Both the position numbers and the translations under genes were made by a program. Positions 4,615 through 56,199 of a stretch of 64,000 nt of DNA are shown here, in pieces; the first letter of the stretch is position 1, and the number at the start of each line of letters is the position of its first letter. The notes under the pieces were generated by a model that saw nothing but the letters and a program-made list of their open reading frames with translations, was not told where the DNA came from and did no database searches. The stretch spans positions 1 through 64,000 of IMG/VR virus record IMGVR_UViG_3300028840_005860. One strand, given 5' to 3'.

Positions 4615-4640
4615 TGTAAAAACGTCGGATACGTCGTGTA
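4615..4640 (+). promoter_or_regulatory. class I phage promoter TGTAAR-N14-CGTRCA (first of 15 copies)
   Basis: Copies on + at 4615, 9942, 10186, 11937, 14057, 15573, 17834, 21996, 24512, 33635; on - at 8332-8357, 30840-30865, 31538-31563, 39889-39914, 56174-56199; spacer counted as 14 nt in each. Confidence 0.8.
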
Positions 4641-4647
4641 GGGGGTC

Positions 4648-5139
4648 ATGAAGATCGGCATCAAGAGCTACCGAAGCTGTGCGGGCAACGAGGGAGACGC
4701 CTTCTCCTGCACGCTCTACCTGGACGGCAAGAAGGCCGCGCTCGTCAAGTACGACGGGTGGGGAGGCCAGTACGACTACGACTTCACGTTCGCGGACGGG
4801 AGGCCTTGGGGCGGTCCGACGTGTCTGAAGTTCAAGGAGCACGTGGAGTCGCTGCCGGAGCGGACGTGCTCTTTCGACGATCCGGGGACGGGGGAGCCCG
4901 CGAAGGTCGCGGTGAACATGGACATGCTGGTGGAGGACGCGATTCAGCTGATGCTGGAGAACCGGCAGCTCAGGAGGTGGTGTCGGAACGAGACGCTGTT
5001 CAGGGTGAAGGGCGACGACGAGGGTTCGTGGCGCCGACTGAACGTGAAGTTTCCGGGCAACGAGGGCCGCGTCAGGTACTACCTGTCGAGGGAGCACGGC
5101 GACGCGATAGAGGAGATCGCCAACGAGAGGTTCGCGTGA
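4648..5139 (+). CDS. phage hypothetical protein
   Basis: 163 aa ORF, typical GC3-rich codons, ATG 7 nt after class I promoter. Confidence 0.8.
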   Translation: MKIGIKSYRSCAGNEGDAFSCTLYLDGKKAALVKYDGWGGQYDYDFTFADGRPWGGPTCLKFKEHVESLPERTCSFDDPGTGEPAKVAVNMDMLVEDAIQLMLENRQLRRWCRNETLFRVKGDDEGSWRRLNVKFPGNEGRVRYYLSREHGDAIEEIANERFA

Positions 5140-5140
5140 G

Positions 5141-6241
5141 ATGAGACGAGCGAAGACCGAGGATCTAGACTACCTGGCCACCCAGGCGGCAGTCAGGATA
5201 CTGGCGCACAGGCCCGTGTCCGAGGGGTCGGAGGGGCCCGGACCGTGGAGCGACTCCAAGTTGATGGACGCGGTGGTCAGTCGGCGCGGCGACCTCGTGC
5301 AGATCGAGGTGTGGGACAGGAGCCAGAAGGTGGCGTTCCTGGAGATCCATCCCGGGACGTGGGAACGCGTGAAGTTCGTCGTGGGGGAGTGGCTCCTGGC
5401 CCTGTTTCGCCTCGACGAGATCCCCTCGTACCTGCACGAACGCGTGGGCGGGGCCGCGAGCCCGCGCCCCAGGGTCGGGTCTCGCGGCCTGTACTACGTT
5501 CTCTATCACCGGAGGGGGCGGGATCGTACGATCCTGCTGGTCGAGAGCGACATGGAGTTGGAGGACCTGAACGGGGCGTTGGGCCCGCTCGACCTGTACG
5601 CGCGCGAGGTTCCCGAGGAGATGGCGGCGTCGGTCTCGGAGGTGATGCCGCCGTGGACGTGGGCTCGGGAAGTCGGGATGTTCGTCAGGCCGGTGAGGGT
5701 GGGGAAGGAGGCGCGGCTGGACGTCCTGCGCACGCCGGATCCCGTCGAGGATCCTGCCGAGCCTCCCGTCGCGGGGTCGGAGAAGGAGCTGCTCGAGGAG
5801 GGGAGGCTGCTTCGCGAGGTGCTGCAGGAGGAGAGGAGGGCGATCCTCAAGCTCCGCGGAGGCGCCGAGCCGCCGGTCCTGTGGAAAGTGGCCTGCGAGT
5901 ACGACCTCGAAGACGAGGCGTGGAGGTGCCTGCGTGGGCTGGCGCTTCCTCCGGGCGTCGAGCTCGAGGACGTTCGTCGGATCGTCGACGCGCTCGCCGT
6001 GGCGTTTGACGATCGGGCGGTGCTCCTGGGCCGAGACGAGGACTCCGACGTGCTGGAGTGGTTTTACTGGCACTGGACCCGCGTCGTGCCCGCGGCGGTC
6101 CTGGATCGCGTCTGGACGGACCTGGGTCGGAGGTCCCAGCACGCGCTGTACGTGGACGGGTTGAGGAGCCTGGAGCCGCGAAACATCTCGCCCGCGTGGG
6201 TCGAGGCACGTCGACCCACGGTCGGGGAGCCGCAGGCATGA
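5141..6241 (+). CDS. hypothetical protein
   Basis: 366 aa ORF coupled to its neighbours. Confidence 0.75.
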   Translation: MRRAKTEDLDYLATQAAVRILAHRPVSEGSEGPGPWSDSKLMDAVVSRRGDLVQIEVWDRSQKVAFLEIHPGTWERVKFVVGEWLLALFRLDEIPSYLHERVGGAASPRPRVGSRGLYYVLYHRRGRDRTILLVESDMELEDLNGALGPLDLYAREVPEEMAASVSEVMPPWTWAREVGMFVRPVRVGKEARLDVLRTPDPVEDPAEPPVAGSEKELLEEGRLLREVLQEERRAILKLRGGAEPPVLWKVACEYDLEDEAWRCLRGLALPPGVELEDVRRIVDALAVAFDDRAVLLGRDEDSDVLEWFYWHWTRVVPAAVLDRVWTDLGRRSQHALYVDGLRSLEPRNISPAWVEARRPTVGEPQA

Positions 6242-6567
6242 GCTCGGAAAGCTGGTCGCGGCTCGACGGGCTGAGGCTGAGCTCGGGGCACGTGCTGAAG
6301 GTCAGCGCGTACCGAACGAACGACCGGCCGGCGTTGGTCGCCTACGACGAGGAGTGGGTTCCCGAGTGTCACGTGACGGTGAACCTGGTGGACGAGCTGC
6401 TCGGGGACGACGAGTTTCACGTTCGGTTCGAGGACCGGGAGCACGCCGGCGCCGTGTTCGACGCGCTGGTGGCCGACGGGCTCGCGGAGCCGACGGGGAG
6501 GGTCGTGGGAGCGGGGTACGTCCCGCGCTACGCCGAGGTCTGGAGGCTGCTCGAGGAGGAGGGGTGA
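6238..6567 (+). CDS. DUF4313-like hypothetical protein
   Basis: ATGA overlap; HVTVNL...LVADGLAEPTGRVVGAGY pattern. Confidence 0.55.
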   Translation: MSSESWSRLDGLRLSSGHVLKVSAYRTNDRPALVAYDEEWVPECHVTVNLVDELLGDDEFHVRFEDREHAGAVFDALVADGLAEPTGRVVGAGYVPRYAEVWRLLEEEG

Positions 6568-8325: not shown

Positions 8326-8424
8326 GCCCTCTGCACGGACGTTTCGACGAATTTACAGGAGGAGCGCGGGTCGCGCAGAGCGCTTGATCTGCAGGGGAGC
8401 AAGCTGTCGTGCGATGCTCGAGTC

Positions 8425-8628: not shown

Positions 8629-8687
8629 GCGTCTCATCTCCCTCAGACAAGGCGGTCGTGCTTCTTCGTCTCGGGTAGAACTCCTTG

Positions 8688-9412: not shown

Positions 9413-10016
9413 TCGAGGGTGTCTACGCCTCGAGCTGCGCGAGCGCCTCGCGCAGCTCGCTCTGGAGGGCCTCCACGGTCTCGTCCGCCGCCGAGGCGGC
9501 GCTCTCGAGGCTCTGGAAGTCCCAGCGTCCTTCCTCGTAGCCGATCTCGTCGTGGTGGAGGGTGGAGAAGCGGAGAACCTGGAGCTCCTAGCGAGGCGTA
9601 CAGGGCCTCAGGAGAGGTCCCGAGAGGCTGATCTCGTGGGCCACGACCTCGAGGGACCATCGGAAGGGACCCACGAGGGCGGTCCAGCCGTCCCCGTCGC
9701 GGGGAGCAGCGGCCTGGTCGTCGTCGAGCGGCCGCCAGGGGAGCCTGGAGGCGGCGAGGAGGGGTGGAAGGTGCTGGTGGTCCATTGGAGGTCCCGGGTT
9801 CTCGGAGCAGAGAGGTGGCGTGAGGCGGTTTCTTGCGATCTCATGCCGGTGGGGACCCCGTTCTCGGACACGGCGCCACGTGAGAAGGCTCACAGTCAGT
9901 GTCCGGTTCGCGGACACTCTCGCGCACCCTGCGCCTGTTTGTGTAAGATCGGTGGGTGGTGCGTGCAGGGGGACGAGGGCGACGTCCAGGGTGGACTACG
10001 CCTGGAGGAAGAGCAG

Positions 10017-11684
10017 ATGAGCGAACCAGACATGGACACGGCGAGAAGGTGGCTTGAGCTCGTGAGGAGCGACGGCGACTCCGAGTCGAAGGCGAAGTAC
10101 CTGCGCGAGAAGGGGTACACGGACGAGCAGGTGGAGGAGTTGATGGCGGAGGAGGAACCCGAGTGCGAGGACTGCTGACGGCGGATGTAAATCTGCCGGG
10201 TCTTCCGTGCAGGACGTCATGAGCGAGGCAACGAAGAGCGACACGCTCGAGCTAGTCGCGGAGTGCATCTGCAGGGCGGAGAGTTCGGCGGAGCCGAGGA
10301 AAGTCCTCGAAGAGGGGAAGATCCTCCTGGCCGAGGCCGTCCTTCGCGGCGAGCAGCTAGACAAGGTGCGCCTGGAGCTGTTCATGCTCCAGTGCGCCAA
10401 GAACTACCAGACGGACGGCAGCGACCGGGCCGTGCTGGCGTGGGCGCCCTTCCTCGGGGCCTGTGCGGACTACGTCCGGGAGGGGGTGGTGTGCATGGGA
10501 GACGGCCGGGTGGCGACCGCCGAGGGATGGGACTACTCCAACTGCGAGCCCGTGGAGATCATCGCGACGTCACCCGAGAGACGTACGAGCGGCATCGGCG
10601 GTTCGTGCTCGAGGGTGTCGGCCCCGAACCCGCTCCGAACTCCCCGACGGAGGAGGCCATGAGCGACGAGAAGTTCAAGCTGACCCCCGACATGGAACCC
10701 CTACCCATGAAGGCGCTGAAGGACGGGATCTGCATTCACTGCAAGGAGACCCTCAAGAAGGACACAAGGTGTGTGTGGATCGCAGGAGAGGGACTGCTCC
10801 ATGACAGCTGCCTGGGAGGGCCCAACCTCTTCCACGAGGAGGAATCCGAGCTCACTCGGGAGCGCAAGCAGGAGCTGCTCGAGGGCTGCACGGAGATGTG
10901 CATCAAGGTGCTCGTGCAGAAGGGAAGTCCGGCAGAGCGGCACGGTGGTGCCGTGATGACGGCGTCGATAGGCGCCCTGGAGGGGTACGTGATGGTCCAC
11001 GCCGCCTACGAGGACTCGCCCGACGGAGAGGAGATGGCGACCTTCCTCGAGGTCCTGGAGGACGACGACGTCGACTGGAGGAAACTCGGATGAAGGTGAA
11101 GAACGCGGTCGTGTACAAGGACGAGGGGAGCTGCGGCCCGGTGTGGGTGGTCAGGAACGGCAAGTGGTCCAACTACGAGGACTCGGAGTTCGAGGACCTG
11201 AACGGCAATCCCAGGCCCGAGTGGTTCACGCGCAGGCAGGCGGCCGCCATCGCCAGGCGCGAGGGCCTGCCGCTGGTGGACGGCTAGGAGAAGCCTGGTG
11301 GAACGCCTATGCTTCGCGAGTGATGGAGGTCGAGCAGTGGAGTACGCGGACAGGACGGAGAAGATCGAGGACCTGGTGATGCGCGCGGAGGAGGTCGAGG
11401 ATCCCCGGGACGTGATCGAGGAGGCTCTCGAGGAGATGGCCCAGGCCGTGATCGAGGACGAGGAGCTCGACGCGCCGCGTCTGAGGAAGCTGGCCATGCG
11501 CTTCGCCAGCGCCGCGCGAGGGGACCCCACGCACCTCGGTAAGGTGCTGGCGGGGCTCCGGTTCGTGAGCAACGTGGACTCCTACGAGCGAGAGCGCCAA
11601 GTCGTCCTGGGAGACGGCCGCACGGCGACCAGGGACGGCTGGCGGGAGTCCAGCCCGGAACCCAGACAGGAGCGTTCGTCTTGA
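10017..11684 (+). other. run of short hypothetical genes (10017-10178, 10219-10662, 10659-11093, 11090-11287, 11337-11684)
   Basis: ATGA-overlap coupling, SD motifs, class I promoters at 9942 and 10186. Confidence 0.7.
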
Positions 11685-11941
11685 TCGGAGTCGTGGAGAC
11701 CGTCACTCCCGAGCGGGCTCGGGAGCTTCTCGAGCACAACAGGTGCGGGCGCCCCCTCGACCCCGACATCGTGAAGATGATGGCTCGGGCCATGCGCAGA
11801 GGGCGCTGGTCCCCCGACATCCAGGGGATGTCTATCCGGTTCGACGCGGAGGGGTACGTGGTCCAGGGGCAGACGCTGCTGGCGGCGGTCGTGGAGGCGG
11901 ACGCGACCCTCGAGATGGTGATGGAGCCTCGGTTCGTGTAA
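11681..11941 (+). CDS. short ParB-N-like protein
   Basis: VETVTPERARELLEHN...RW...IRFDAEGYVVQGQTLLAAVV. Confidence 0.55.
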   Translation: MIGVVETVTPERARELLEHNRCGRPLDPDIVKMMARAMRRGRWSPDIQGMSIRFDAEGYVVQGQTLLAAVVEADATLEMVMEPRFV

Positions 11942-11968
11942 AAAAGTCAGGTGTCGCGTGCAGGGAGC

Positions 11969-14029: not shown

Positions 14030-14283
14030 AAGTCCGGCAGCGCAGCCCGCGCGGGATGTAAGATCTTCGGGGGCGTCGTACAGGGGTCACGATGATCGTG
14101 AAGGCTTACGACGCCAGCGGGACCGAGCCCGAGAAGCTCGTGTGGGAAGGAGACCTCGAGGAGCTCCTCCGGGAGTACCAGGGCGACCTCACGGCGAGCG
14201 ACGTCGCGCAGCTGCGGTGGCTCCAGGTGGGGCAGTCGGCCACGGTCGGAGGCGGCTTTCGCGTGGAGCGCGTGGGATGACGT

Positions 14284-15116: not shown

Positions 15117-18100
15117 TGAAGATCGACCCCAGGCCCGATCACTTCGAGTACGACATCCGGGCGATCCTCCGGTTCACCGCACGGGACCTGCGAGTGCTCC
15201 GCTACTACGCGGAGCGCCACTACGACCACACCTGCAAGACGTTCTTCGAGAGCGGCGGCAGGGGCAACGCGTGGCGCTGGAGCTTCCGGCGCGACGACGA
15301 GGACGTGGACCCGTTCGACAAGGCGTGCCCGCCCGACCTCGAGTGTGAGTTCCCGTCGACGGGCAGCATCCGCGAGCTCGACCTGTGCCTCAAGATCCTC
15401 GAGGGGGTGGAGTTCGAGCGTGAGGAGGATCTCATCGCGGAGGCGTGGCGCCTGCGGGGCGAGATCCTCAACCTCGTAGACCTCATTCACGCCGAGTACG
15501 CCCGTGTCCGCGGAACTCCGGCCGCGCCCGAGAGCGCGAAACGCGCGGCACCGTAGCACTCCACGATCCGAGTGTAAGAAGTTCCCGACCCCCGTGCAGA
15601 ACGCAGGAGCAAACCACATGGCGACCAAGAAGACCACCAAGTTCGACAGGCGGACCGTCCGCACCATCCTCGCGGAGGTAGAGGAGGCGCTCCGGCCGGT
15701 CGCGGAGAAGCACGGCATCCGGCTAGAGAGGAAGCACTGCACCTACCACGCCGACGAGCTGCCGGTCGCCTACAAGTTCCTCATCACGGAGCTCGACCAG
15801 GAAGGCAACGAGATGTCGAGCGACGCCAAGGAGTTCGTGCGACAGGCCGAGTTCCACGGGCTCAAGCCGAGCGACCTCAACAAGGGGGTCACCGTGCGGG
15901 GCGAGAAGTACCGGATCGTGGGCCTGCGTCCCAGGAGCCGCAAGTATCCCATCCTGATGGAGCAGGTGCGCACCGGCAAGATCTACAAGTTCTCGGCCAA
16001 GTCGGTCGCGTTCGGGCTGAAGGCCGCGAAGGCGGCGTAGGTGACGACGATGGCGACGATCAAGATTGCAGCCAGCGAGATCGAGGGCCCCTTCCTCGTG
16101 AAGGTGGGGACCTTCGACGGCGGCCAGAAGAACCTCACCGTCCCGACCCTGAAGGACGCCTCCTACGCCGTGAAGGGTTTCATCTGGGACGACCGCGTGC
16201 GCTCGAGCGACTGGCACGGCGGCGAGGTCGTCCGCGACGACGGCACCGGAGACGTGGTGGCCGTCGTGAGCTACAACGGCCGAGTGTGGGGCGCCAAGGC
16301 GCACCCGACCGACCCCTGGCACGTCCCCGACAAGGCTCTGGAGTTCGACCTGGATGCGTGACCTCACGAGCTTGACGGTGGAGGTCTGGCGAGGCCGCAA
16401 GATCGAGCCCGGCACCGTGGCGCGCTGCGTCTGGCACGGGAGGACCCGGTTCGGCTGGCGGGTGCTGCTCGAGATGAACGACGGCGTCGCCCACAGCCAG
16501 GTGTTCACGAGGGCCTCCAACGTGCGTCCCCTGGAGGGCCAACCCGTGCAGGAGAGCCTGTTCCGGGGAATGCCGCGCGAGGTGCGCTGAAGATTCTTCC
16601 GATCCCCCGTACAGGGGGTCGCGTAACAAACACAACCCCAACAGGAGCACAGCAACATGCCACAGACCGTTTTGTTTTTCACCAAGGGCGAGGTCGCGGA
16701 GCTCGTCCGCACGTTCCTTGAGCAGGAGGGGCGCGACGTCTTCAACGCCATCATTCAGTTCTCGTCCGAGGGCGTGCACGTGGGCAACTGCCCTGAGGCC
16801 GCGGCGCCCTGCAGCTGCGACGACGAACCCGAGGACTTCGACGACGCGGAGGCTCCCGAGGATTTCGTGGGACACATGCAGGGGGCGGACGTGCTGGCGG
16901 CCATCCGCATGAAGCCGCGCACGGCCTGGGAGATCGCGGAGGAGATCAGGAGCGACGCGTGCTCCGTGAACAGCACTCTAGGGCATCTCGGAGACAAGGT
17001 CGCCAAGGTGGCTCCCGCTCGAGAGGATGGCGAGACCGTCTCCCGCTGGATGGCGACGGGCTCCGACGAGTACGGCGCCTTCGTCGCGCAGGAGAAGGAG
17101 CGTGTCGAGGCCCAGGTCGAGAAGTGGAACGCGGACGTGCTCAAGCACGCGCCGGCGTTCTACGAGAGGTACGAAGATCGCATGACGATCCTCGAGAACC
17201 TCATCTCGGGGTACGTCGCGACGGACGAGGAGATCCGGCGCGACTGCAAGTCGATCTTCTACGCGATGGCCGAGAAGGGACTCCTCGAGCACCACGAGCA
17301 CGGCTGGCGGGCCGCCAAGACGGACGCCGACCGCGTGAGGGTGGCGGCCATCCAGGGAGGCATCCGGGAGGTCCTGCGGGGCAAGGAGGAGGGACTCACG
17401 ACCGACGAGATCCGCGACGCCCTGCCGGAGCAGCTCGACAAGAACCTCATCCGACACTGCCTCCGGCACATGGACGACGCGTACCGGGGCAGCGACGGTC
17501 GCAGGCGCCTCAAGGACTAGCACCGAGAACGAGCAGGGGCGCCCCCTCCTCGAGGGGAGGCGCCCCGCATGTTCCTCACCAGGTCCCTAGAAGTGCGGGA
17601 CGATCTGGAGGGTCGTCGTGCCACCGAGTCGCGCGGTGCTCACTCCGGCCGTGTTCTGCGGCCCCGAGGGATTGTTGGCGGTGACGCCGCGCGCTCGGGC
17701 GACGTTCGCGTAGACGCCGTGCTCGCGGAGGGCGATGTAGGCGGCGATGGGGGTGGTGCGACCGGCGGGAAGGATGGGATTCATGGCTGAGCTCCTCGAA
17801 GGAGGGTGCGCGATAGGCGTAAAAACGTGTCGATGTAAGATTTTCCGAAGCCGCGTGCAGAGAGTAATGACGAATCCAGACAACTTCCAGAAACTCGTGG
17901 CTCACCTGCAGGCATTCATCAAGAAGGCCCCCGAGGAGGACCCGTACGACTGCGACCCCATGGAGCTCTACTGCGGCAACGAGGACGACGCCCGCAGGCT
18001 GGGCGAGGAGGCGGCGGAGCATCGCGTGGCAACTCAGATGAAGGAGTGGCTCCTCGAGGTCGGCGAGCCTCCGGAGAAGGGTTGAGCGATGCCGAGAGTT

Positions 18101-30584: not shown

Positions 30585-30860
30585 CTCTCACCTCTCCGTC
30601 ATGGGGAAAACCTCGTCGTCCTGCTCGGGCCAGACCGAGCTCAGCAACCCTCGCACCGCGTCGTCTAGTGACGAGTAGCCGTAGAGGATGAAGGTGCCGC
30701 CGAGATCGTCGGTCACCTCGTACTCCGTCGGCACCGCGGTGGCCCGCACGACCCAGCACTCGTCTCCGGCGGAGACGGTGTGCTCGTCCGGGCCCGTGGG
30801 CACGACCTCGATGTGGTCTGGCAGGACCATCTTGCCCCTTGAACGGAGCACCGGAGAAGT

Positions 30861-31490
30861 TTACATCCGCCTCGGCGCAATCAGCGCCTTGTCCTTCCAG
30901 TACAGCACGGAGACCCGCAGAGCGGCCTCAAACTCCTCAGGAGACATCCCCGTGGCCGTCCCACCGTCGAGCTCGAAGTGGTTGGCCATGAGGGTCCAGG
31001 GCTCTATCGGCGCCTCCTCGTCCGTCGTGCGGCCGTTGAGGCTGATGACGTCCCAGTCGCAGCCGGTGCAGTCCTCGCCGCCCTCCTCGAGCACGTCGCG
31101 CCGATAGAGCACGACGTCCACGTACCTGCACCTCTGCTTGCCCGCGCCGGGCTGGCACGCCTCCTCCGGGCGCGAGACCCAGACCTGCTTGCGCGGCTCC
31201 TCGAACTGGCGCCTAGCCTCGTAGCGCCCCACGAGAGTCTCGCCCTCTCTGAGCGTGACGAGCCCGGTGAAGAAGCTGTCGGGCGGCACGGGCACCAGCA
31301 CGACGCCGTCTCGGTAGCCGGGTTTGGCCTCGTGGAAGTGCTCCCTGACGAGCGCGAGGACCTTGTTCCAGTCGTCCTCGGGCGTGAGCGCCGTGGTGCC
31401 GTCCTCGAAGTGCGTGAACTCCGAGTCCCAGGTCTGGCGCCGGACGAAGTCGTTGATGCCGATGGTGGGAGTCTCGTTGGTGCTGGTCAT
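30861..31490 (-). CDS. conserved phage hypothetical protein
   Basis: GYRDGVVLVPV, YEARRQFEEPRK, VDVVLYRRDVL, TLMANHF..GGT. Confidence 0.7.
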   Translation of the reverse strand: MTSTNETPTIGINDFVRRQTWDSEFTHFEDGTTALTPEDDWNKVLALVREHFHEAKPGYRDGVVLVPVPPDSFFTGLVTLREGETLVGRYEARRQFEEPRKQVWVSRPEEACQPGAGKQRCRYVDVVLYRRDVLEEGGEDCTGCDWDVISLNGRTTDEEAPIEPWTLMANHFELDGGTATGMSPEEFEAALRVSVLYWKDKALIAPRRM

Positions 31491-32619
31491 CGTCGTCTCT
31501 GCCTCACACCTGTAGACGGAGCGAGGTCCCGACGTCTGACACGCCCTTCGTGAAATCTTTACAGCGCGGGTCGCGCGCTACTCCTCGTCCTCGTCCTCGA
31601 CGCGCTGCCACTCGCCCGAGGGCTTCCTCTTCCAGACCCCGGTGTCCTTGTCCTTCTCGGCCCACTCGGGATCCGGGTCGGGCTTCTCGAGCGCCTCCTT
31701 CACGGCCTTCGGATCGAGGTCGATGGTGGAGGCGTTCGGGTCGACCGTCGAGTCCCCGGTCTCGATCACGAGCTTGATGCCCTCGGAGCTCGCGATGCGG
31801 CCGACGACGAACGTGTCGAGGTGGAACATCTCGGCGAGCTCGTGCAGCGAGTACCTCCTCTCGCCCGGAGCCCACGAGCGCAGCTCGCGGAGCAGCGAGT
31901 TGATCCTGGCCTGAACTCCGACGCTCATGCACTTAAGCGTGGACGATGAACGAATCATCGTCGGGAACGAGCCGGGAAGGCCCGGAACGTCGCGGGGTCG
32001 AGGTCCCTCGATCGGCTCGAGCGCGAGAACCGCCCGGAACTCCCGCTCAGGGTGATGCGAGGTGGAGGCCGCCGATGGCCTTCTGGATCTTGGCCAGGTC
32101 ACCCTCCATCTTCCTGCAGCGCTCCTCGAGCTCGCGGTTCTTGGTCCCGGCCTCCTCGAGAAGCCTGTCCTGGGTTTCGATGAGGCCCCTGTCGCGTTCG
32201 GACGTCGCCTTGAACGTGTCCCTCGCCGACTCGACCTCGACCAAGAGTTTGCGGACCTCCTTGAGCTTGAGCCCGGCCTCCTCGAGCTCCTCGCTCCTCA
32301 GGGTTAGGGCGCCGTCCTCGTCGTACCCGACGAGGAACTTCCTGGTGGTGGTGACCAGATGTCGGGTCGTCGAGACTGCCCCGTCGTTGTAGCAGTTGCT
32401 CGGGTCGGGAACCTGGCGGGGCTCGGAGCCGAAGCAGGTCTCGACGTCCGTCTCCTCGAAGCTCTCGAGCAGGACCCAGCCACTCTCGGTCGCCAGCTGG
32501 AGCTCGTCGGCGTCGACCACCTTGCGAGGACCTCTGATGGAGAGCTCTTGGTCGGACATGGCCCCTCTTCTACCCCCTCCTCGAGAGCTTCGTGAAAAGT
32601 CCGGTAGGGTGCCCTCGAG

Positions 32620-33597: not shown

Positions 33598-33714
33598 GCG
33601 GCCGAATTCGGCCGAACTGGGTCCCCTACGCGAATGTAAAATTCTCGTCCTCATCGTGCATGGGTCAGGAATAGAAAGCATGGCCCGTTGGTAATGCAGA
33701 TGAGGAGCGAAGAG

Positions 33715-35443: not shown

Positions 35444-35729
35444 CGTACTCGGTGTACTCGCCCGGAAGTCAGGCTGCTAGAACCTCTTGCGCAGCCGACG
35501 CCCCTGCGCCACGTCGAACATCAAGTTCCTCGAGGGGCCCGACAGGGAACGCCAGAAGGAGAAGGAGGTCCGGTACTCGAGGGGCACCTGGTCGAGCTCG
35601 AGATGCGCCACGCTCTGCTGGAGGTTCCGCGCCCCTCTCGAGCGCAGGTACTCGAGCAGCCGGGCGAATTCCCGCTCCACCCCGTTGAGGGACTGCTCTC
35701 GAGACGACATCAGACGGCTCCTTCATCGG

Positions 35730-35801
35730 CACCCCCGGCTGGACTCGAACCAGCGACCTCGGATTCCGGAGACCCGTGCTCTTCCGCTGAGCTACGAGGG
35801 T
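35730..35801 (-). tRNA. tRNA-Arg(CCG)
   Basis: Full cloverleaf, loop CTCCGGA; no complete encoded CCA. Confidence 0.9.
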
Positions 35802-35802
35802 G

Positions 35803-35879
35803 TGGTGACCGGACCTGGACTTGAACCAGGGACCTCCTGCGTGTCACACAGGCGCTCTAACCTGCTGAGCTACCCGGCC
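35803..35879 (-). tRNA. tRNA-Val(GAC)
   Basis: Cloverleaf, loop GTGACAC, encoded CCA. Confidence 0.9.
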
Positions 35880-35882
35880 ATC

Positions 35883-35958
35883 TGGCGTTCCCGGTAGGGC
35901 TCGAACCTACGACCTCCGGTTTAGGAAACCGGTGCTCTTCCTTCTGAGCTACGAGAAC
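35883..35958 (-). tRNA. tRNA-Arg(CCT)
   Basis: Cloverleaf, loop TTCCTAA, encoded CCA. Confidence 0.92.
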
Positions 35959-36536: not shown

Positions 36537-36613
36537 TGGTAGGCCCGGTGGGACTCGAACCCACGACCTCGACCTTATAAGGGTCGAGCTCTGACCAGCT
36601 GAGCTACGGGCCC
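36537..36613 (-). tRNA. tRNA-Ile(TAT)
   Basis: Cloverleaf, stem CGACC/GGTCG, loop CTTATAA, A73, encoded CCA. Confidence 0.92.
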
Positions 36614-39554: not shown

Positions 39555-39937
39555 CTCGCTCTCCTCGTGCGCAGGCACAGGGTGCGACCGCTCGGGAGGT
39601 TGGACGGCCACTCCGAAACGGAGAGCATCTCGAGTTCCTCGATCGTCAGACCCCTCCGCTCGGCCTCCGCGCACACGCGCTGCCGAGCGACGTAACCTTC
39701 TCCCGTAGCCGTCCACGTCGCCCCACTCAGGCGGCGTCTCTCGCCCGTCCTCGTGGTGGCCGTCCCGCGGACCCGGTAGATCGTCACTGCTTGGTTGGTG
39801 CGCTTCGCCATGTTGCTAGTGAAACCTTACTGGCCCGTTGGTCATTCCCATCATCGGCCACTTTTTTCGGGAAAATCAGCTCTGCCTCTGCACGGAGCAC
39901 CCGAAACCTCTACACCGCTCTGGGCGTAGAAACCGCG

Positions 39938-42196: not shown

Positions 42197-42840
42197 CAGG
42201 GAACCTCCAGCCACTTGTGGATCTGCAGGGACAGCCGCCAGTCGGGATGCTTGAGGCAGAACGCCACCGCCCAGTCCAGCACCTCGCCGAAGGGCGGTCC
42301 CGAACTCGGTGCCTCGGGTTGGACGAATCGATGTCGGCACTCGACCTCCTCGTACTCGAGCGGGTCGTAGGCCGGGAAGACGACCTTGAGCTCGTCGGCC
42401 TTCCTGAGCCTCAGCTCCGAGAACGGGCGCTTGGGGCTGAGCGAGACCCAGTCGAACCCCCCGACGAACGGGAGCTCGAGCGTTCCGTTCGTCTCGAGCG
42501 CCAGCGTGGCGTCCGGGAGGCCGTCGTCCACGGCCTCGAGCAGCTCGGCGTCGAGTTGGAGGAGAGGCTCCCCGCCGGTGAAGACCACGTGCTGGATGCC
42601 GTCGGCGAGTTCGACTACCCGAGCTGCGACCTGCTCGGCCTCGAGGCGTTCGCCCTCGAGGAAGTCCGTGTCGCACCAGGCCGGACACCGAGCTCGAGAC
42701 TTCGCGACGTCCCTAGCCCGATGCCCTTCCCGTCCCGACCAGAGGTTGCAGCCCGCCAGCCTGACGAAGACCGCCGGCGTGCCAGTCCAGTACCCTTCGC
42801 CCTGGAGGGACCTGAAGACCTCTTTGATGCGGTAACTCAT
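42196..42840 (-). CDS. queE: 7-carboxy-7-deazaguanine synthase (radical SAM)
   Basis: KEVFRSLQGEG...PAVFVRLAGCNLW...WCDTDF, FTGGEP, ETNG, SLQIHKWL. Confidence 0.93.
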   Translation of the reverse strand: MSYRIKEVFRSLQGEGYWTGTPAVFVRLAGCNLWSGREGHRARDVAKSRARCPAWCDTDFLEGERLEAEQVAARVVELADGIQHVVFTGGEPLLQLDAELLEAVDDGLPDATLALETNGTLELPFVGGFDWVSLSPKRPFSELRLRKADELKVVFPAYDPLEYEEVECRHRFVQPEAPSSGPPFGEVLDWAVAFCLKHPDWRLSLQIHKWLEVP

Positions 42841-43415
42841 CGACCACCTGCCCCCTTCTGCATCTGTCGATGAACGGCCTCGAGGTCGTAGGGGCTGGGC
42901 GTGGTCCCCGAGATCGACAGTCGTCTCTTCTTGGGCCGGTGCCTCACGCTCGAGAACGTGGCCCTTGAGGTCGGGGTCTCCCAGACGACGACCTCCACCA
43001 TCTCGAACTCCTCGAGCTGCGGGCTGGAGTTGGCCAGCCAGTACAGGTGCCTAGCCAGGCACTCTGCCGTCGGGGGTTCCTCGAGCGCGAACCATCGGCG
43101 CCCCCCGTCGGCCACCTGCATCTCCGACATCTTCGCCATCAGCTCGTCCTGCTCCCAGTAGCAGACGTTGTGGTCCCAGTTGTCGTTGACCCAACCCCCG
43201 ACGATCCTCTTCAGCAGCCCGAAGTCGACCACGAAGCCTTCCTCGGTCAGCTTCTTCGCCCTGCAGGTCACCTCGGCCCGGTACCGGTGACCGTGGAGGT
43301 GGCGGCACTTGCCGTCGTGAAGCGGGATGCGATGCGCCATGTCCCACTCGATGGTGGCCGTCACCTCGTAGTCCCCGTCGGACCGGACGGCCGGAGCTTC
43401 TGCTGTGCTGGTCAT
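42837..43415 (-). CDS. queD: 6-carboxytetrahydropterin synthase domain, possible internal start
   Basis: AHRIPLHDGKCRHLHGHRY, GFVVDFG, WDH, PTAE, VWETPTS; GAGGAGG SD before ATG 43415. Confidence 0.9.
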   Translation of the reverse strand: MTSTAEAPAVRSDGDYEVTATIEWDMAHRIPLHDGKCRHLHGHRYRAEVTCRAKKLTEEGFVVDFGLLKRIVGGWVNDNWDHNVCYWEQDELMAKMSEMQVADGGRRWFALEEPPTAECLARHLYWLANSSPQLEEFEMVEVVVWETPTSRATFSSVRHRPKKRRLSISGTTPSPYDLEAVHRQMQKGAGGR

Positions 43416-44222
43416 GACCTCTTCCTCCTCCTGGACCGGGAAGTGCTCGAAGATCCCCTCGTAGGCGACGTACGTCTCGGTCTCGGCCACCATCTCAAGG
43501 ACCTTCCGTCGGTACTGCTCGGCGTAGGTCTGGCTGTGCCGGGCTCGAGGATCCTCCTCCCGCACGCGACCCTCCCAGCTCCATGCCATCGAGTCCGAGC
43601 TGGCCAGGTACGGCAGCGCCCGTCGCAGGCCGCTGATCTTGACGCCGAAGCCGTGAAGTCGAAGGCCGAGCGCGCTGAGCTCCCCCAGCATCTCGATCAC
43701 CTCGTCGTCGGACTGGCGCCGGGCGATGGAACCGACTCCCACTAGGGGCTGCTCGAGCAGGTCGATGCCGGCCTCGTCGTACATCTCGATGTGGCGGAAG
43801 TAGTCATCGAGCCCCCAGCCCTGGAGGGTTGGAAGCCAGGCCACCCCGGGCTCGAGCTGAACGAGCTCGAGCCAGCTGCGGACGGTGAGCTCCTGGTGCT
43901 CGAGCACGCTCTTGCCGGTCGCCTCGAGGACGTCCGGGCTGCACAGCCAGTCCTGCGTGGCCGCCCACTCCATCGTCCCGGTACCCTCCGCGATCTGCCT
44001 CACCCGCCTGGCGTACTCCTCCGCCGAGACCTTCCAGCGGCCGTTCCGAGCCAGGTGGGAGTACGCGCCCGAGTCCAGGGCGAAGGGCGCTCGGCCGGCG
44101 GGGAAGGGTCTTTTGCGGGGCGCCAGCACGTGGTAGGCGACGAAGAGGTGCTCCGAGCTCCCCCCGTTCCAGACCCAGTTGGTCCGGTCCGTACCCAGGT
44201 AGAACGTGAAGTCGAAGCTCAG
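42837..44222 (-). CDS. dpdA: DpdA-like (DUF7221-type) TGT-fold transglycosylase fused in frame to QueD
   Basis: FYLGT, FALDSG, AATQDWLC, PTLQGW, VGVGSIARRQ, LHGFGVK, SSDSMAWS; CTG start inferred from overlap with the queC stop. Confidence 0.75.
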   Translation of the reverse strand: MSFDFTFYLGTDRTNWVWNGGSSEHLFVAYHVLAPRKRPFPAGRAPFALDSGAYSHLARNGRWKVSAEEYARRVRQIAEGTGTMEWAATQDWLCSPDVLEATGKSVLEHQELTVRSWLELVQLEPGVAWLPTLQGWGLDDYFRHIEMYDEAGIDLLEQPLVGVGSIARRQSDDEVIEMLGELSALGLRLHGFGVKISGLRRALPYLASSDSMAWSWEGRVREEDPRARHSQTYAEQYRRKVLEMVAETETYVAYEGIFEHFPVQEEEEVMTSTAEAPAVRSDGDYEVTATIEWDMAHRIPLHDGKCRHLHGHRYRAEVTCRAKKLTEEGFVVDFGLLKRIVGGWVNDNWDHNVCYWEQDELMAKMSEMQVADGGRRWFALEEPPTAECLARHLYWLANSSPQLEEFEMVEVVVWETPTSRATFSSVRHRPKKRRLSISGTTPSPYDLEAVHRQMQKGAGGR

Positions 44223-45058
44223 GGCTCGTCCTTCCCTCGGGGGTCGTCGGCTCCGTTGCGCAGGGCCTCCTCGACCTCCTCCTTGGTGATGCGCCGAGCC
44301 TTCTTGAGGTCCTCGGGAGACAGCGGCCTGGCGGGGTCGGGCACCCCAAACTCGACCGGCACGTACGCCTGAGCCGGATCCTTCAGCCCGGCCTCCTCGA
44401 ACCCGCGAGCCCGAAGCTTGCAGGCCGGGCACTCGCCGCAGCCTGGCCTCTCGCCCCGGTAGCAGGTCACGCTTCTTTCCAGCGCCTTCCAGCAGTCGTC
44501 TCCGAGGAGTAGGGCGAAGAGAACTGTCTCCTTCTTGGTCTTCTTCAGGAGGGGAGCGTGGATGGTCCAGGGGAGCGTCGAGCTCGGCATCGCGGCCTCC
44601 AGCGCCATCACCATCTTCTCGATGAACACCTGGCGACAGTCCGGGTACCCGCTGAAGTCGGCTTCCGAGAACCCCACCACGAGGTCGCTAGAGCCCTTCT
44701 TCACGGCGTACGCGGCCGCCGCCCCGAGGAACAAGAGGTTGCGGCCCGGAACGAAGGAGGTCGGAAGCCCGCCAGCCACTTCGTCGTCGTCCAGCCCGCC
44801 CGAACTCTGCAGCTTCCTCGAGCTCGTCGCCAGCAGAGCCGAGTCCCCGAGCTGTGCCAGCACGCTCAGCTCGAGAATATCGTGGGGAACGCCGGCCTGC
44901 CTCGCGATGTCGCCAGCTGCCAGGAGCTCGTCCGCGTGGCGCTGGCCGTAGTCGAACGACAGCGCGAAGACGTCGTCGAACCCGTTCCTCGCCCAGAAGA
45001 GGCAGGTCGTGGAGTCCTGACCTCCACTGAAGAGAACCACGGCCGATGACCTGATCAT
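44219..45058 (-). CDS. queC: 7-cyano-7-deazaguanine synthase
   Basis: VVLFSGGQDSTT, FDYGQRH, FVPGRN, GYPDCR, CY...CGECPAC. Confidence 0.95.
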   Translation of the reverse strand: MIRSSAVVLFSGGQDSTTCLFWARNGFDDVFALSFDYGQRHADELLAAGDIARQAGVPHDILELSVLAQLGDSALLATSSRKLQSSGGLDDDEVAGGLPTSFVPGRNLLFLGAAAAYAVKKGSSDLVVGFSEADFSGYPDCRQVFIEKMVMALEAAMPSSTLPWTIHAPLLKKTKKETVLFALLLGDDCWKALERSVTCYRGERPGCGECPACKLRARGFEEAGLKDPAQAYVPVEFGVPDPARPLSPEDLKKARRITKEEVEEALRNGADDPRGKDEP

Positions 45059-48370: not shown

Positions 48371-48446
48371 TGGGGCGTAGGTCAGTTGGCAGACCGCCGG
48401 GCTCTGAACCCGGAAGTCGAAGGTTCGAACCCTTCCGCCCCAGCCA
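48371..48446 (+). tRNA. tRNA-Gln(CTG)
   Basis: U1-A72, loop CTCTGAA, G73, CCA. Confidence 0.92.
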
Positions 48447-48447
48447 C

Positions 48448-48518
48448 TCGGGAGTCGTCTAGCGGTCGGACGCCTGACTTTGGATCAGGAAACCGGGGTT
48501 CGAGTCCCTGCTCCCGAG
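48448..48518 (+). tRNA. tRNA-Gln(TTG)
   Basis: U1-A72, loop CTTTGGA, G73. Confidence 0.92.
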
Positions 48519-48779
48519 CTGCCGTCAGCGTCGAAGGCTGTTCATCAGTTTGAGGAGCCTCTCGCCCCGGAGCGCGGCTTCCTTGCATTCTTCCAGGTCG
48601 CACAGGTCCTCGCAGAACGTCCCGTACTGGTTCGTCACGGTGATCGGCTTGCCCGAGCGTGTGCACAGGATCTCCACGCTGTCCGGGGCTGTCCAGTGAT
48701 GTCGCGAGTCACACATCATGCGTACCAGTCTCTGTCTCTGGGCCGTCTCGCCCCCGTCACGGTACCACCTCTCCATCTA

Positions 48780-53082: not shown

Positions 53083-53083
53083 A

Positions 53084-56000
53084 TCAACCCTCCTCGGTCA
53101 CGGTCGCAGAGTCTTGAGGTTTGGGGTCCTTCCGAGAACGGGCCAACTGACCCTCCAGATCGACCACTCGTTTCTGGAGGTCCTCGATCTCGTTCGCGGA
53201 GCACGAAAGGTTGACCCTGAAAAGGTCGAGCAGGAAGAGGCTCTCGGCGTACCGCCTGCGAATCTCCTTGAGGGGCATGCGCCGAATCTCCCGTTCGTAC
53301 TCGGAGACCCTCTGTTGAACGTCGATCACGACGTCCTCACCCAGACGGACGTGTCCACGTCCTTCCCCGAGCCCTGCATGATGTCGTGGGCTCGGTTCTC
53401 GTCGCCCTCGACGAACGCCTCGACCGCCAGCAACGCCTTCTTGTAGGCGTCCGGGTCCGTGTACTGGTCCTGCATCGCTCGGATGCGACAGATGCGGATG
53501 AACTCGTGAATCTTCATGTTCGCGTCTCCTGCTGCTTGGCCTTGGCCGCGGCCTCGATCTCCCGGCGTTCTAGCCAGTAACACCGCCGCACTCGAGCTGA
53601 CTCGTCCTCGGTGAACTCGATGGTCACGGCCGGGCCTCCCAGGAGGACCTGCGCCGCCGGAACGGGGGCAGCAACCTCGGGAGTCGCCGGGTCGTACTGG
53701 GCACACGCCACCCCGGTGGGCCACAGGACACCGCCGCCGTAACTTCCCCACCAGACGGTCCTGAGAAGCCAGTGCCACAGCCGATCTCTCAGGGTCAGCG
53801 TGGCGCGCCACTCCTCGTCGCGGAATCCCCTGACGTACGGTCGCCTGCCCTCCCAGAGCATGTCGGCGATCTCCACGAGCCCCTCGACGAAGCACGCGTG
53901 GTCGAACTCGGGAAACTCGGGGTCGACCTCTCGGGCCGTCGCGACGAGCCGCCGGTAGAACTCCCACAGGTTCACGCCCTTCGCCTCCCCTCGGCAAGCG
54001 CGTGCCAGAGCTGCTCGTTGCACGCGATGCGTACTGCACGGGCCCCATGCCAACGCCCCAGAACGTAGGCCGCGAGGACGAGAAGCGCTCCGCCAACCCA
54101 TGCGAGCACCGGCACGTCACACCCCCCACATGGGCATCGGGATGAAGCCGAGCCGCACGAGCTTCCGGATCACAACCCGGTCGTTGATGTGCTGGCTCGT
54201 GCCGTAGACCGAGAAGACCACCCTCTCCCACGGCGTGAGCGCGAAGAACCGCTTCGCCGCCTTCGTCACAGCACCCTCCAGTCGTAGGTCGCCTCGCAGC
54301 GCCAGTACCGAAGCCTGCGGCCCTCCGCCTTCACCGTCTCCACCTTGGTCGAGAACGCCTTCAAATGCGCCCGGACCGTCACCTCGTACCCCCCGTACCC
54401 CCCGTCGTCCTCGCCGGCGTGTGCCGTGGTCTTGAACTCGACCGTGCCGAACTCGCCCAGGACCGGAGCCTCCTCCTGGCACCACTCGACCTTCTCCAAC
54501 CCGGAGTCCTCGCACTCGAAATCCATCTGCACGTGGCGTCCGCGAGAACCCCAGTACTCGTAGGAGCCGATCCCGTTGTCGACCATGCGGCCTTGTGGCC
54601 TCACGGCCTCCCGCAGCTCCTCCTCCGGGTGGGAGAGAGGCACGCCCGCTCTCGTTAGCAGTCCCTGCATCACCAGGTTCTCCATCACTTCAGCCTTGCT
54701 CGTCATGGTTCGCCTCTCTCTTGCCCGTTCCATCTTCTCCGCACGAACGACAGGCGGCCGAAAGGTCGCGCCCCTCGTTGAACACCCCGCAGTTGCCACA
54801 CTGCCAACGCGGGGTGCTAGTCGCCCGCAACTTCGCAGCGAGGTCCTTCTCGTTGATCGGCACCCGCCAGTAGCCGCCGCTCTCCTCGCTCATCCACTCG
54901 TACTCGGGATGCCTCTCGGCGTCGACCAGGTAGCCATACACCTTCTCGACCTCCTCGGCGGTCAAGCCCAGATCGTGTGCCAGGTCCTCGCGCCTGACCG
55001 CCCCCCGGTTCTTGCGGTACCACTCCATCACCGCACGGGCGACCTTGCGGGCGCGTGACCGTCGGGAGACCTTGCGCCTCTTCACGGCGCCTCCTTGAGT
55101 TTCTCGATCGCGAGGTCGACGATGGCCAACCCGACCTCGAGGTCGGCGGCACGGTGCTCGCTGTCGTCGTCGCTCTGGCTGTCCACCAGGGCCTTCCGCG
55201 TGCGCTGGAGCTCGGTCATCGTGTAGCCGTACTCCGCCCGCGCCGTCCCGGCGGTGTCGCCCGGATGCGTGGACCAGAGCTGCATCAGCGGATCGGTGGC
55301 CGCGTCGAGGTCGCCGTACGGATCGTCCGGGTCGCGGTGGGGGTCGCGCTCAGGCATCCCCCAGCTGAGGGCCCCGTAGACCTCCTCACGTTCGCCCGGT
55401 CCCACGCAGATGCGCCTCTCCGGGAGGGTGAACGCCTCAGGGTCGATCGTCGCGTGCCTAGTCATGCTCATGCCCTCTCTCCACGAAACAACGGCAGCCA
55501 GGGCGCCGGAACCCGACCCCTGCGGGCCTCCTCGCGCATCGCCTGACGACCGGCCTCGGTGATCACGTACTCGCCACGGTCGATGTCCATCACCACGAAA
55601 CCGCGGGTCCCCAACCGATGAAGCGAGTCCAACTCCTCGTTGCGCTTCACGTCGAGAAACGAGAATGTCCCCGCCGCGAGGTCGCGCATGATCCTCTGCT
55701 GCGTATGACCGAGCCGAGCCCTCACTCCCGATACCCCCTCACGCGCTCGCCCAACACCGTCAGCGCTCCGGGCACCGCAAGGCCCCGACGCCGTAACTCG
55801 TTCATCGCCTCGGAGTCGCGCACGACCGGCCACTCTTGCAGGGCCAATCGGGCCGGCGCCGAGAGGTACCTCCACACGCGTCCGATCTCCTGGTCGCACA
55901 GCGCCGCCTCGGCGTACGTCATCGGATCTCCTCCAGTCGGCCGCCCTCGTCGGTCAGCCAGACGCTCTCCATGCCCGCCGCCAGACCGAAGCCTCGTGCG

Positions 56001-56161
56001 TTGCACAGGAACATGAACTCGGGACGCTTGGCGTTCCGCATCGTGAAGTAACAGGCGCCCCGCTTCCCGTGAAGCTCGTACACCGTCCGGCCGTCCTTGC
56101 CCTCCCGACTCGTCACCGTGAAGGCTCGACCGTTGACTTTGATCTCGTTCGGGGTGCTCAT
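53084..56161 (-). other. run of short hypothetical genes (e.g. 53084-53329, 54266-54706, 54690-55085, 55082-55471, 55919-56161)
   Basis: Co-oriented coupled ORFs downstream of class I promoter 56174-56199. Confidence 0.65.
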
Positions 56162-56199
56162 CCTCTTGCCACCTGCACGGGACCCCTGACGTTTTTACA

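What the first reader, a model, noticed from the sequence alone, without database searches (positions are those of the whole stretch)
4615..56199. Genome-wide promoter TGTAAR-N14-CGTRCA, 15 copies, apparently making leaderless mRNAs
Seen: 15 intergenic copies, always oriented with the downstream gene and with a spacer counted as exactly 14 nt. At 4648, 8325, 10219, 11969 and 17867 the ATG lies 6-7 nt after the -10 box with little room for an SD. Established: ECF sigma promoters often have CGT-type -10 boxes, and a start codon at +1 defines a leaderless mRNA. Inference: this is a regulon of a phage-encoded sigma factor with an unusually short spacer.
Basis: partly seen in the sequence, partly recalled or inferred. 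Interest (0 to 1): 0.65.

Follow-up and report, generated by a model that had tools for sequence, protein, structure and literature searches.

The report
Jumbo-phage sigma-type promoter, leaderless genes
A two-box DNA signal repeated 24 times in an uncultivated 230-kb phage is almost certainly a promoter read by a phage-encoded sigma factor, and half of its copies sit so close to the start codon that the mRNAs must have no leader or almost none.

Summary
TGTAAR-N14-CGTRCA occurs 12 times exactly in the window (0.01 expected). It finds 24 in the 230,069-bp virus genome. With up to one mismatch there are 22 sites at spacer 14 and 0-1 at any other spacer. Sites are intergenic or at gene boundaries, co-oriented with the next gene where one is clear, and absent from the structural arm. 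Twelve of 24 have the start codon 4-12 nt downstream (null 2.7%).

The motif recurs in related huge phages. A 618-kb relative uses CATGCA in place of CGTGCA throughout, at orthologous positions. One orthologous pair keeps the 7-nt gap to the start codon although every intervening base differs.

The 1536-2726 protein belongs to a virus-specific, ECF-like sigma family (sigma-2 plus sigma-4). However, the window's copy lacks 15 residues of sigma-4, and the genome holds a second sigma-like gene. The sigma-promoter link and the transcription starts are therefore inferred, not shown; no RNA data exist.

Verdict: a real feature, a new member of a known kind (phage sigma regulon) with a short spacer and a largely leaderless output.

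The parts
1536..2726 (+). gpA: ECF-like sigma-family gene with an N-terminal extension of about 220 aa. It is the candidate reader of the motif. The window's copy has a 45-nt in-frame deletion at 2601 inside sigma-4.
   Evidence: Sigma70_r2 weak hit. More than 258 homologues, several named sigma24 by JGI. Profile hit to sigma-H 3mzy over sigma-2 plus sigma-4, E 0.0036. Top VIA rows are mostly ECF sigma domains, Z 4.2-6.0. Deletion.
1300..1535 (+). Host-type promoter (TTGCnn, 17-18 nt, TGTGnTAGAnn) and a conserved leader of about 200 nt upstream of the sigma gene.
   Evidence: Conserved across six diverged phage contigs in alignment A2.
4398..4423 (+). Motif site, exact. No ORF follows; it is the likely promoter of a small RNA.
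4424..4550 (+). Candidate non-coding RNA of about 120 nt, ending in a hairpin plus U-run at 4510-4548.
   Evidence: No ORF. Fold z-score -3.2 with a terminator hairpin. Terminator-like hairpins flank the unit: 4360-4385 lies upstream and 4527-4544 is part of its 3' hairpin.
4615..4640 (+). Motif site (second box CGTGTA); ATG at 4648, 7 nt downstream.
8332..8357 (-). Motif site; ATG at 8325, 6 nt downstream; RadC-like JAB gene.
9942..9967 (+). Motif site; downstream start uncertain (ATG 49 nt on).
10186..10211 (+). Motif site; ATG at 10219, 7 nt downstream.
11937..11962 (+). Motif site; ATG at 11969, 6 nt downstream. The TAA inside the first box is the stop codon of the upstream gene.
14057..14082 (+). 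Motif site; ATG at 14092, 9 nt downstream.
15573..15598 (+). Motif site; ATG 19 nt downstream with GGAG. An orthologous site exists in the 618-kb relative.
16588..16613 (+). Motif site (first box TGAAGA); ATG 43 nt downstream with GGAG.
17834..17859 (+). Best-scoring motif site; ATG at 17867, 7 nt downstream.
21996..22021 (+). Motif site; ATG 22 nt downstream with GAGG.
24512..24537 (+). Motif site just after a terminator; ATG 23 nt downstream with GAGGAG.
30840..30865 (-). Motif site (second box CGTTCA); ATG at 30830, 9 nt downstream.
33635..33660 (+). Motif site; ATG 33 nt downstream.
39889..39914 (-). Motif site (first box TGTAGA); downstream gene unclear.
56174..56199 (-). Motif site; ATG at 56161, 12 nt downstream.
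31538..31563 (-). Weak candidate site (14 bits, second box CGTGTC); not counted among the 24.

Best explanation
The motif is the promoter of an early or middle gene class of an uncultivated jumbo phage. Host RNA polymerase is redirected to it by a phage-encoded, ECF-like sigma factor. The most likely reader is the gpA family encoded at 1536-2726, which is itself transcribed from a conserved host-type promoter. TGTAAR acts as the -35 box and CGTRCA as the -10 box, held 14 nt apart. Transcription should begin 6-9 nt after the second box. At the 7 sites with a 6-7-nt gap, the first transcribed base is then the start codon or the base before it (a leaderless mRNA). At the sites with gaps of 9-12 nt, the leader is only a few bases. 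The remaining sites drive ordinary leaders with a Shine-Dalgarno, and one drives a small RNA. Shown: the motif, its statistics, its conservation and concerted variation in relatives, the start-codon geometry, and the sigma fold of gpA. Inferred: promoter function, which sigma reads it, the start point, and leaderless translation.
For: Statistics: 12 exact sites against 0.01 expected; 24 sites clearly separated from background; spacer 14 only. Context: sites are intergenic or at gene boundaries, and three follow hairpin plus T-run terminators; one stand-alone unit lies between terminators with no ORF. Geometry: 12 of 24 starts lie 4-12 nt downstream against a null of 2.7%, P about 4e-13; the genome's own GGAG-to-start spacing peaks at 5-10 nt, so the G-run 1-3 nt from the ATG cannot serve as a Shine-Dalgarno; in relatives the gap holds no purine run at all, for example caaagt or tgtgtt before the ATG. 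Conservation: the same motif has bimodal scores in four related contigs and beside gpA homologues in L134 (8-10 sites), L136 and L183; the 618-kb relative G005 shares 150 proteins with this genome and has about 10 sites, all with CATGCA and none with CGTRCA; a 36%-identical homologue sits among 9-10 sites of TGTAGA-N14-TGTTGA; orthologous promoters keep their place, and one pair keeps a 7-nt gap to the start (GTG in one, ATG in the other) with all seven bases different. The sigma: searches support a sigma-70-family protein; the family is virus-specific; a host-type promoter upstream of it is conserved in six phages. Precedent: the sigma gp47 of phage 7-11 reads GTAAtg-N16-aCTA and starts 6-9 bp downstream (PMC8948821).
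Against: No transcription start is mapped; no RNA run holds the phage. The window's gpA lacks 15 residues of the sigma-4 helix-turn-helix. A second sigma-like gene (153086-154915, minus strand, preceded by TTGACA-N17-TACTTT) and a region-4-only protein (189906-190517) are also shared with G005, so co-occurrence does not separate them. gpA homologues of 60-62% identity (L181, L182) show only one or two weak variant sites in the flanks available, and homologues of 26-45% identity show no such motif. In L138 the second box is followed by GGAG and 5 nt before the ATG; that reads like a working Shine-Dalgarno and would put the start earlier. Fold matches to sigma domains are modest (Z up to 6), and the Pfam hit is below its cut-off. 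The -35 box lacks the C of the ECF AAC triplet, and the spacer is 2-3 nt shorter than in ECF promoters.
Confidence: 0.55

Rival explanations
1. The promoter is real, but it is read by the other phage sigma-like protein (153086-154915, minus strand, 609 aa) and not by gpA.
For: The protein has a sigma-70 region 4 hit at the cut-off and a weak ECF-family hit over residues 435-591. Homologues are about 375 aa, and some are named sigma24. The gene has a host-type TTGACA-N17-TACTTT promoter upstream. It is shared with G005 at 45% identity, diverged enough to fit the CGTGCA to CATGCA shift.
Against: It lies 100 kb from the main cluster of sites, whereas gpA sits at the head of that cluster in this genome and in L134. 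No region 2 was detected by Pfam. The genome has other promoter-like classes (TATAAGG) that also need a reader.
Confidence: 0.2
2. A host alternative (ECF-type) sigma factor reads the motif, and the phage sigma-like genes serve other promoters.
For: The boxes resemble bacterial ECF promoters: TGTAAC-type -35, CGT -10, and a T-rich start of the spacer (and my own knowledge of B. subtilis SigX and SigW). The -10 difference between G000 and G005 could reflect different hosts.
Against: All motif-bearing contigs found belong to one phage clade. That clade carries gpA wherever the region is sampled; G001-G004 are colinear with parts of G005 that lie far from its sigma gene. The closest cultured or deposited relatives by terminase have no site. 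Relying on a normally sequestered host ECF sigma for early genes would be unusual (my own knowledge). The host genome could not be searched because the host is unknown.
Confidence: 0.12
3. Transcription starts at or right after the second box (CA then G). The mRNAs then carry 6-12-nt purine-rich leaders rather than none.
For: A G-rich run follows the second box at most G000 sites whatever the distance to the ATG. In L138 the second box is followed by GGAG plus 5 nt plus ATG at six of nine sites.
Against: A bacterial holoenzyme starts 6-9 nt after its -10 element. No phage RNA polymerase was found: the Rpb1 catalytic-domain search was negative with working controls, but the T7-like search lacked a working control. 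Relatives have no purine run in the gap. A Shine-Dalgarno 1-3 nt from the ATG is outside the genome's own working range, so translation would still depend on the 5' end.
Confidence: 0.15
4. The motif is a binding site for a regulator (an operator) or an RNA-level signal, not a promoter.
For: The two boxes are a partial inverted repeat (TGTA ... TRCA). Their centres lie about two helical turns apart.
Against: The motif is strictly co-oriented with the downstream gene and has asymmetric flanks. No other promoter-like element lies nearby, and there is no room for one between motif and ATG. One stand-alone unit lies between two terminators.
Confidence: 0.05

Closest known systems
Late promoters of Salmonella phage 7-11, read by its own sigma gp47 (and phiEco32 gp36)
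   Same: A phage-encoded, highly diverged ECF-like sigma redirects host core polymerase. The consensus is bipartite with a GTAA-type upstream box (GTAAtg-N16-aCTA), and starts were mapped 6-9 bp downstream (PMC8948821).
   Different: Here the spacer is 14 rather than 16 and the second box is CGTGCA. The class is not late: there are no sites in the structural arm. The sigma has an N-terminal extension of about 220 aa. Many start codons sit at the predicted start point. No sequence relation between the sigmas was tested. Nothing here is experimentally mapped.
Bacterial ECF sigma promoters (EcfG GGAAC-N16-CGTT; B. subtilis SigX, SigW)
   Same: Two short boxes, a CGT-type -10, an AA-containing -35, a T-rich start of the spacer, and rigid spacing (PMC7083833; the SigX and SigW consensus is from my own knowledge).
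   Different: The nearly invariant C of AAC is a purine here. The spacer is 2-3 nt shorter. The sigma family is found only in viral contigs.
Leaderless mRNAs of phages and high-GC bacteria (lambda cI from PRM; Thermus phage P23-45 middle and late genes; about a quarter of mycobacterial genes), from my own knowledge
   Same: The start codon sits 6-7 nt after the -10 element, AUG dominates, and there is no Shine-Dalgarno.
   Different: Here the arrangement is tied to one dedicated promoter class, and the distance is conserved between diverged orthologues. It is unverified.
Phage sigma cascades (SPO1 gp28 and gp33/34, T4 gp55), from my own knowledge
   Same: A host-transcribed early gene encodes a sigma that switches polymerase to the next gene class.
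   Different: The sigma lineages and promoter sequences differ. T4 gp55 uses a single -10-like element.

Membership tests
Sigma-70 family, group 4 (ECF-like) sigma factor (for the 1536-2726 protein) | Sigma-2 domain (regions 2.1-2.4) | tested here: met
   Pfam Sigma70_r2 scores 15-17.8 bits, below the 24-bit cut-off. The family profile aligns to sigma-H 3mzy from region 2 onward, E 0.0036. Model residues 205-300 match sigma-2 of SigK, SigH, RpoE, SigW, SigR and SigE at Z 5-6. Atlas neighbours are sigma-70 clusters, 0.94. Each line is weak alone; together they agree.
Sigma-70 family, group 4 (ECF-like) sigma factor (for the 1536-2726 protein) | Sigma-4 helix-turn-helix that reads the -35 box | tested here: inconclusive
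   It is present in the family. Profile positions 347-391 align to region 4 of 3mzy, and model residues 324-387 match sigma-4 of SigE and SigD. The window's copy lacks 15 of these residues, which three other assemblies of the same phage retain.
Sigma-70 family, group 4 (ECF-like) sigma factor (for the 1536-2726 protein) | Binds core RNA polymerase and confers promoter specificity | not testable with these tools
   Needs in vitro transcription.
ECF-type promoter | -35 box with the AAC triplet | tested here: not met
   Positions 4-6 are A, A, then a purine in 22 of 24 sites and C in 2. AAC is nearly invariant in ECF promoters.
ECF-type promoter | -10 box beginning CGT | tested here: met
   CGT is invariant in all 24 sites. 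The relative G005 uses CAT.
ECF-type promoter | Spacer of 16-17 nt between the boxes | tested here: not met
   The spacer is 14 nt in all sites, with none at other lengths.
Leaderless mRNA | Transcription start at the start codon, or within a few nt of it | not testable with these tools
   Only DNA runs hold the phage. The geometry fits at 7 sites (gap 6-7 nt) and nearly fits at 4 more (9-12 nt).
Leaderless mRNA | No Shine-Dalgarno at a working distance | tested here: met
   The purine run ends 1-3 nt from the ATG, whereas GGAG spacing in this genome peaks at 5-10 nt. Relatives have no purine run.
Leaderless mRNA | AUG strongly preferred as start | tested here: inconclusive
   Ten of 12 close starts are ATG against 64% genome-wide, which is not significant alone. 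All close starts read by eye in relatives are ATG, but that choice was biased towards ATG.

The most novel reading that the evidence does not exclude
A widespread, virus-only family of ECF-like sigma factors with an N-terminal extension of about 220 aa has co-evolved with a rigid 14-nt-spacer promoter that places the transcription start on the start codon. A whole takeover gene class of huge phages would then be made as leaderless mRNA. This could let the phage keep translating its own genes while Shine-Dalgarno-dependent host translation is shut down or remodelled. The concerted one-base switch of the -10 box between sister phages would be a natural specificity swap, usable to map sigma-DNA recognition.
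Probability: 0.3. Interest if true: 0.75.

Novelty: new member of a known kind. Interest (0 to 1): 0.55.

Why it matters
How huge phages from metagenomes programme their gene expression is almost unknown, because they have no cultured hosts. This finding gives a sequence-level handle on it. It supplies a promoter class that can be scanned for, a candidate sigma family with hundreds of members, and natural promoter variants (CGTGCA, CATGCA, TGTTGA) that track sigma divergence. It also shows a conserved coupling of promoter and start codon, which predicts leaderless translation as a designed feature of a phage gene class. All of this can be tested in vitro with purified core polymerase, without the host. 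Orthogonal sigma-promoter pairs of this kind are also useful parts for synthetic circuits.

Tried and rejected
- Nucleotide searches of the window against deposited phages found nothing.
- No RNA polymerase catalytic domain was found in the genome. The T7-like search had no positive control, so it says little; the Rpb1 domain 2 search was negative with working controls.
- An archaeal (TATA/BRE) reading of the first box was considered and dropped. The genome has hairpin plus U-run terminators, GGAG at bacterial spacing, TTGACA-N17-TAnnnT sites and sigma genes.
- I first took G001-G004 for unrelated phages that share the motif without any sigma gene, which would have favoured a host sigma. tblastx showed they are colinear fragments of G005-like genomes that do not reach the sigma region. 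Their weak helix-turn-helix hits are homing-endonuclease-like ORFs.
- The closest terminase relative (LR745208.1, 54% identity), Tunturiibacter phage Tunturi_5 and one of two other huge phages have no site; the other has a single match, likely chance.
- Ten IMG/VR genomes with gpA homologues (26-54% identity), among them G005, have no exact site. De novo dyad counts in the flanks of the more distant ones gave other motifs: GGTTCC-N15-CCGTA in L146, and a sigma-70-like extended -10 motif in L144.
- Literature searches for the motif itself found nothing relevant.
- Host identity could not be established.
- Foldseek on the whole sigma model gave no significant match.
- Read laying was not used, because only DNA contigs hold the phage.


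Full report
**Source.** The window is the first 64 kb of a single 230,069-bp IMG/VR virus contig. It has 65.7% G+C, CheckV completeness about 90%, 36 tRNA genes, and a terminase, portal and long tail gene in a one-strand right arm. It matches no deposited phage at the DNA level. DNA runs from sediment and seawater metagenomes hold it; no RNA run does.

**The observation.**
- The exact pattern occurs 12 times in the window against 0.01 expected and 16 times in the genome.
- It occurs only with a 14-nt spacer. With one mismatch allowed there are 22 sites at N14 and 0-1 at any other spacer from 10 to 20.
- A weight matrix iterated from these sites separates 24 sites (over 25 bits) from everything else (14 bits or less).
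- Sixteen sites are in the window.
- The conserved signal is wider than two hexamers. A purine precedes TGTAAR, a T-rich ATyTTC follows it, and a G-rich run follows CGTGCA.
- Sites are intergenic or touch gene ends. At 11937 and 16588 the first box supplies the stop codon of the upstream gene.
- Three sites follow hairpin plus T-run terminators.
- Sixteen sites lie in the left 57 kb of small unknown genes, eight between 87 and 169 kb, and none in the structural arm. This is an early or middle class, not a genome-wide one.

**Start-codon geometry.**
- The gap between the second box and the start codon is 6-7 nt at 4648, 8325(-), 10219, 11969 and 17867, and outside the window at 144283 and 168725 (both GTG).
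- The gap is 9 nt at 14092 and 30830(-), and 12 nt at 56161(-).
- It is 19-54 nt elsewhere, where a GGAG-type box sits at normal distance.
- Twelve of 24 sites have a start 4-12 nt downstream, against 2.7% for random intergenic positions (P about 4e-13).
- Across all called genes, GGAG ends 5-10 nt before the start. The G-run that ends 1-3 nt before these ATGs is therefore outside the working range of this genome's own ribosome-binding sites.

**Relatives.**
- A scan of viral contigs with the motif found four contigs with several copies. Matrix scores there are again bimodal, with 7, 4, 3-4 and 1 sites. The gap to the ATG is mostly 6-10 nt and holds no purine run.
- These contigs share few proteins with the query genome and no sigma gene. 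However, tblastx shows they are colinear fragments of a 618,736-bp relative, G005, covering parts far from its sigma gene.
- G005 itself shares 150 of about 333 proteins with the query in conserved order. It has no exact site but about ten sites with the same first box and spacing and with CATGCA as second box.
- Orthologous genes keep their promoters: 15573 here matches 466738 there, and 144151(-) here matches 321378 there.
- The divergent partner at 144250 has a counterpart in G005 in which the 7-nt gap to the start codon is kept. Yet all seven bases differ, and the start is ATG instead of GTG.
- Boxes and spacing are conserved, spacers diverge freely, and one box base has switched in concert across a whole regulon. 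This is what a promoter class read by a diverging trans-acting factor should look like.

**The candidate sigma (1536-2726).**
- Pfam gives only a sub-threshold region-2 hit.
- The protein has more than 258 metagenomic homologues at 36-73% identity, several labelled sigma24 by JGI.
- Its family profile aligns with sigma-H 3mzy over both sigma-2 and sigma-4 (E 0.0036).
- An AlphaFold model (pLDDT 71) puts residues 205-300 on sigma-2 domains and 324-387 on sigma-4 domains of many ECF sigmas, at modest Z of 4-6.
- Atlas neighbours are sigma-70 clusters.
- Residues 20-90 form a confident small beta-rich domain of unknown role.
- The family is essentially viral. Among 185,579 species genomes only four small MAG contigs hold a relative.
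- In six diverged contigs the gene is preceded by 500-700 nt holding a conserved host-type promoter and a conserved leader of about 200 nt. This fits early expression by the host holoenzyme.
- Contigs with close homologues carry the motif next to the gene: L134 has 8-10 sites within 6 kb, L136 and L183 have two each, and G005 has the CATGCA form.
- A 36%-identical homologue sits among 9-10 copies of TGTAGA-N14-TGTTGA.

**Limits of that link.**
- The window's own gene lacks 45 nt that encode 15 residues of the sigma-4 helix-turn-helix. Three other assemblies, otherwise 99.8-100% identical in DNA over the shared region, have them.
- The genome encodes a second sigma-like protein (153086-154915, minus strand, 609 aa). 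Its homologues are about 375 aa, and it has a textbook TTGACA-N17-TACTTT upstream. There is also a region-4-only protein (189906-190517).
- Both are shared with G005, so co-occurrence cannot separate the candidates.
- Homologues of 60-62% identity show only weak variant sites in the short flanks available. More distant ones show other motifs.

**Where transcription starts.** For a bacterial holoenzyme the start lies 6-9 nt after the -10 element, as mapped for the phage sigmas of phiEco32 and 7-11. That puts the start on or next to the ATG at the 6-7-nt sites. A second promoter-like class in this genome, gGTATAAGg, also has ATGs 4-8 nt downstream. Short or absent leaders therefore seem usual for this phage. 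Against this, L138 has GGAG plus 5 nt between its second box and the ATG, which looks like a working ribosome site and would need an earlier start. Only 5'-end mapping can settle it.

**Comparison.** The closest described system is the bipartite GTAAtg-N16-aCTA late promoter of phage 7-11 and its own sigma. Bacterial ECF promoters share the CGT -10 box, the AA of the -35 box and the T-rich start of the spacer. They differ by the nearly invariant AAC triplet and a 16-17-nt spacer. I file the finding as a new member of a known kind, a phage sigma regulon. It has two features worth testing: the rigid short spacer and the conserved promoter-to-start-codon distance.

Noticed in passing
window 2601 (inside gene 1536-2726): A 45-nt in-frame deletion removes 15 residues (ILPLVRSGWSRQEIA) of the sigma-4 helix-turn-helix. 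Three other assemblies of the same phage (L178, L179, L180) have them. It is either a natural variant or an assembly difference, and it may inactivate -35 recognition.
   Followed up: yes
window 4424-4550 (+): The promoter copy at 4398 is followed by no ORF. Instead there is a 127-nt stretch that folds well (z -3.2) and ends in a strong hairpin plus U-run, with another terminator just upstream (4360-4385). It is a candidate small RNA.
   Followed up: partly
window about 1083-1535 (+): The region upstream of the sigma gene is 500-700 nt long in six diverged phages. It holds a palindrome (GGGAGATCTCTCCC), a host-type promoter with an extended -10, and a conserved leader of about 200 nt. No Rfam family matches. 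It is a possible regulatory leader.
   Followed up: partly
window 48197(-); G000 69339(-), 91409, 144214(-), 164178, 227511, 229986: A second promoter-like class, gGTATAAGg, is 16-fold enriched in intergenic DNA. ATGs often lie 4-8 nt downstream. It is conserved next to the main motif in G005 (321328).
   Followed up: partly
window 29322(-), 48209(+); G000 122080, 155053(-), 162766: Canonical TTGACA-N17-TAnnnT sites are enriched in intergenic DNA. One lies upstream of the 609-aa sigma-like gene. They are the likely host-holoenzyme promoters.
   Followed up: partly
window 14288, 32591, 45559(-); G000 66171(-), 78886, 80797: A recurring box TTCGTGAAAA(T)C is often followed at variable distance by GTAGAA. 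Its reverse complement forms the spacer of the promoter copies at 21996 and 31538. Function unknown.
   Followed up: no
window 11939-11941 and 16588-16590: The first promoter box doubles as the stop codon (TAA, TGA) of the upstream gene.
   Followed up: yes
window 42837-44432 (-): A DpdA-QueD fusion protein (DpdA 1.6e-52, PTPS 1.8e-28) points to 7-deazaguanine modification of the phage DNA. The best cultured relatives are in mycobacteriophages at about 40% identity.
   Followed up: partly
G000 153086-154915 (-) and 189906-190517 (+): Two further sigma-related genes. One is a 609-aa protein whose homologues are mostly about 375 aa, so it has an extra N-terminal part. The other is a 203-aa protein with region 4 only, possibly twice.
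   Followed up: partly
G000 against G005 (IMGVR_UViG_3300022719_000283): The 230-kb genome is a syntenic relative of a 618-kb phage: 150 shared proteins, one structural-arm protein at 97% identity and the terminase at 68%. This clade therefore spans a nearly threefold range of genome size.
   Followed up: partly
G000 169354-173001 (+): A RecD2-like helicase is interrupted by an intein with a LAGLIDADG domain.
   Followed up: no
window 29103-29174, 35728-35958, 36537-36613 (-), 48371-48519 (+): Seven tRNA genes lie in the window, out of 36 in the genome. Two tRNA-Gln genes sit in tandem.
   Followed up: no
L182 3303, 4707, 5261, 8528, 8971: A related phage with a 60%-identical sigma homologue has five copies of GGGAATAA-N10-(C/G)ATACC, another ECF-like bipartite motif.
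   Followed up: no
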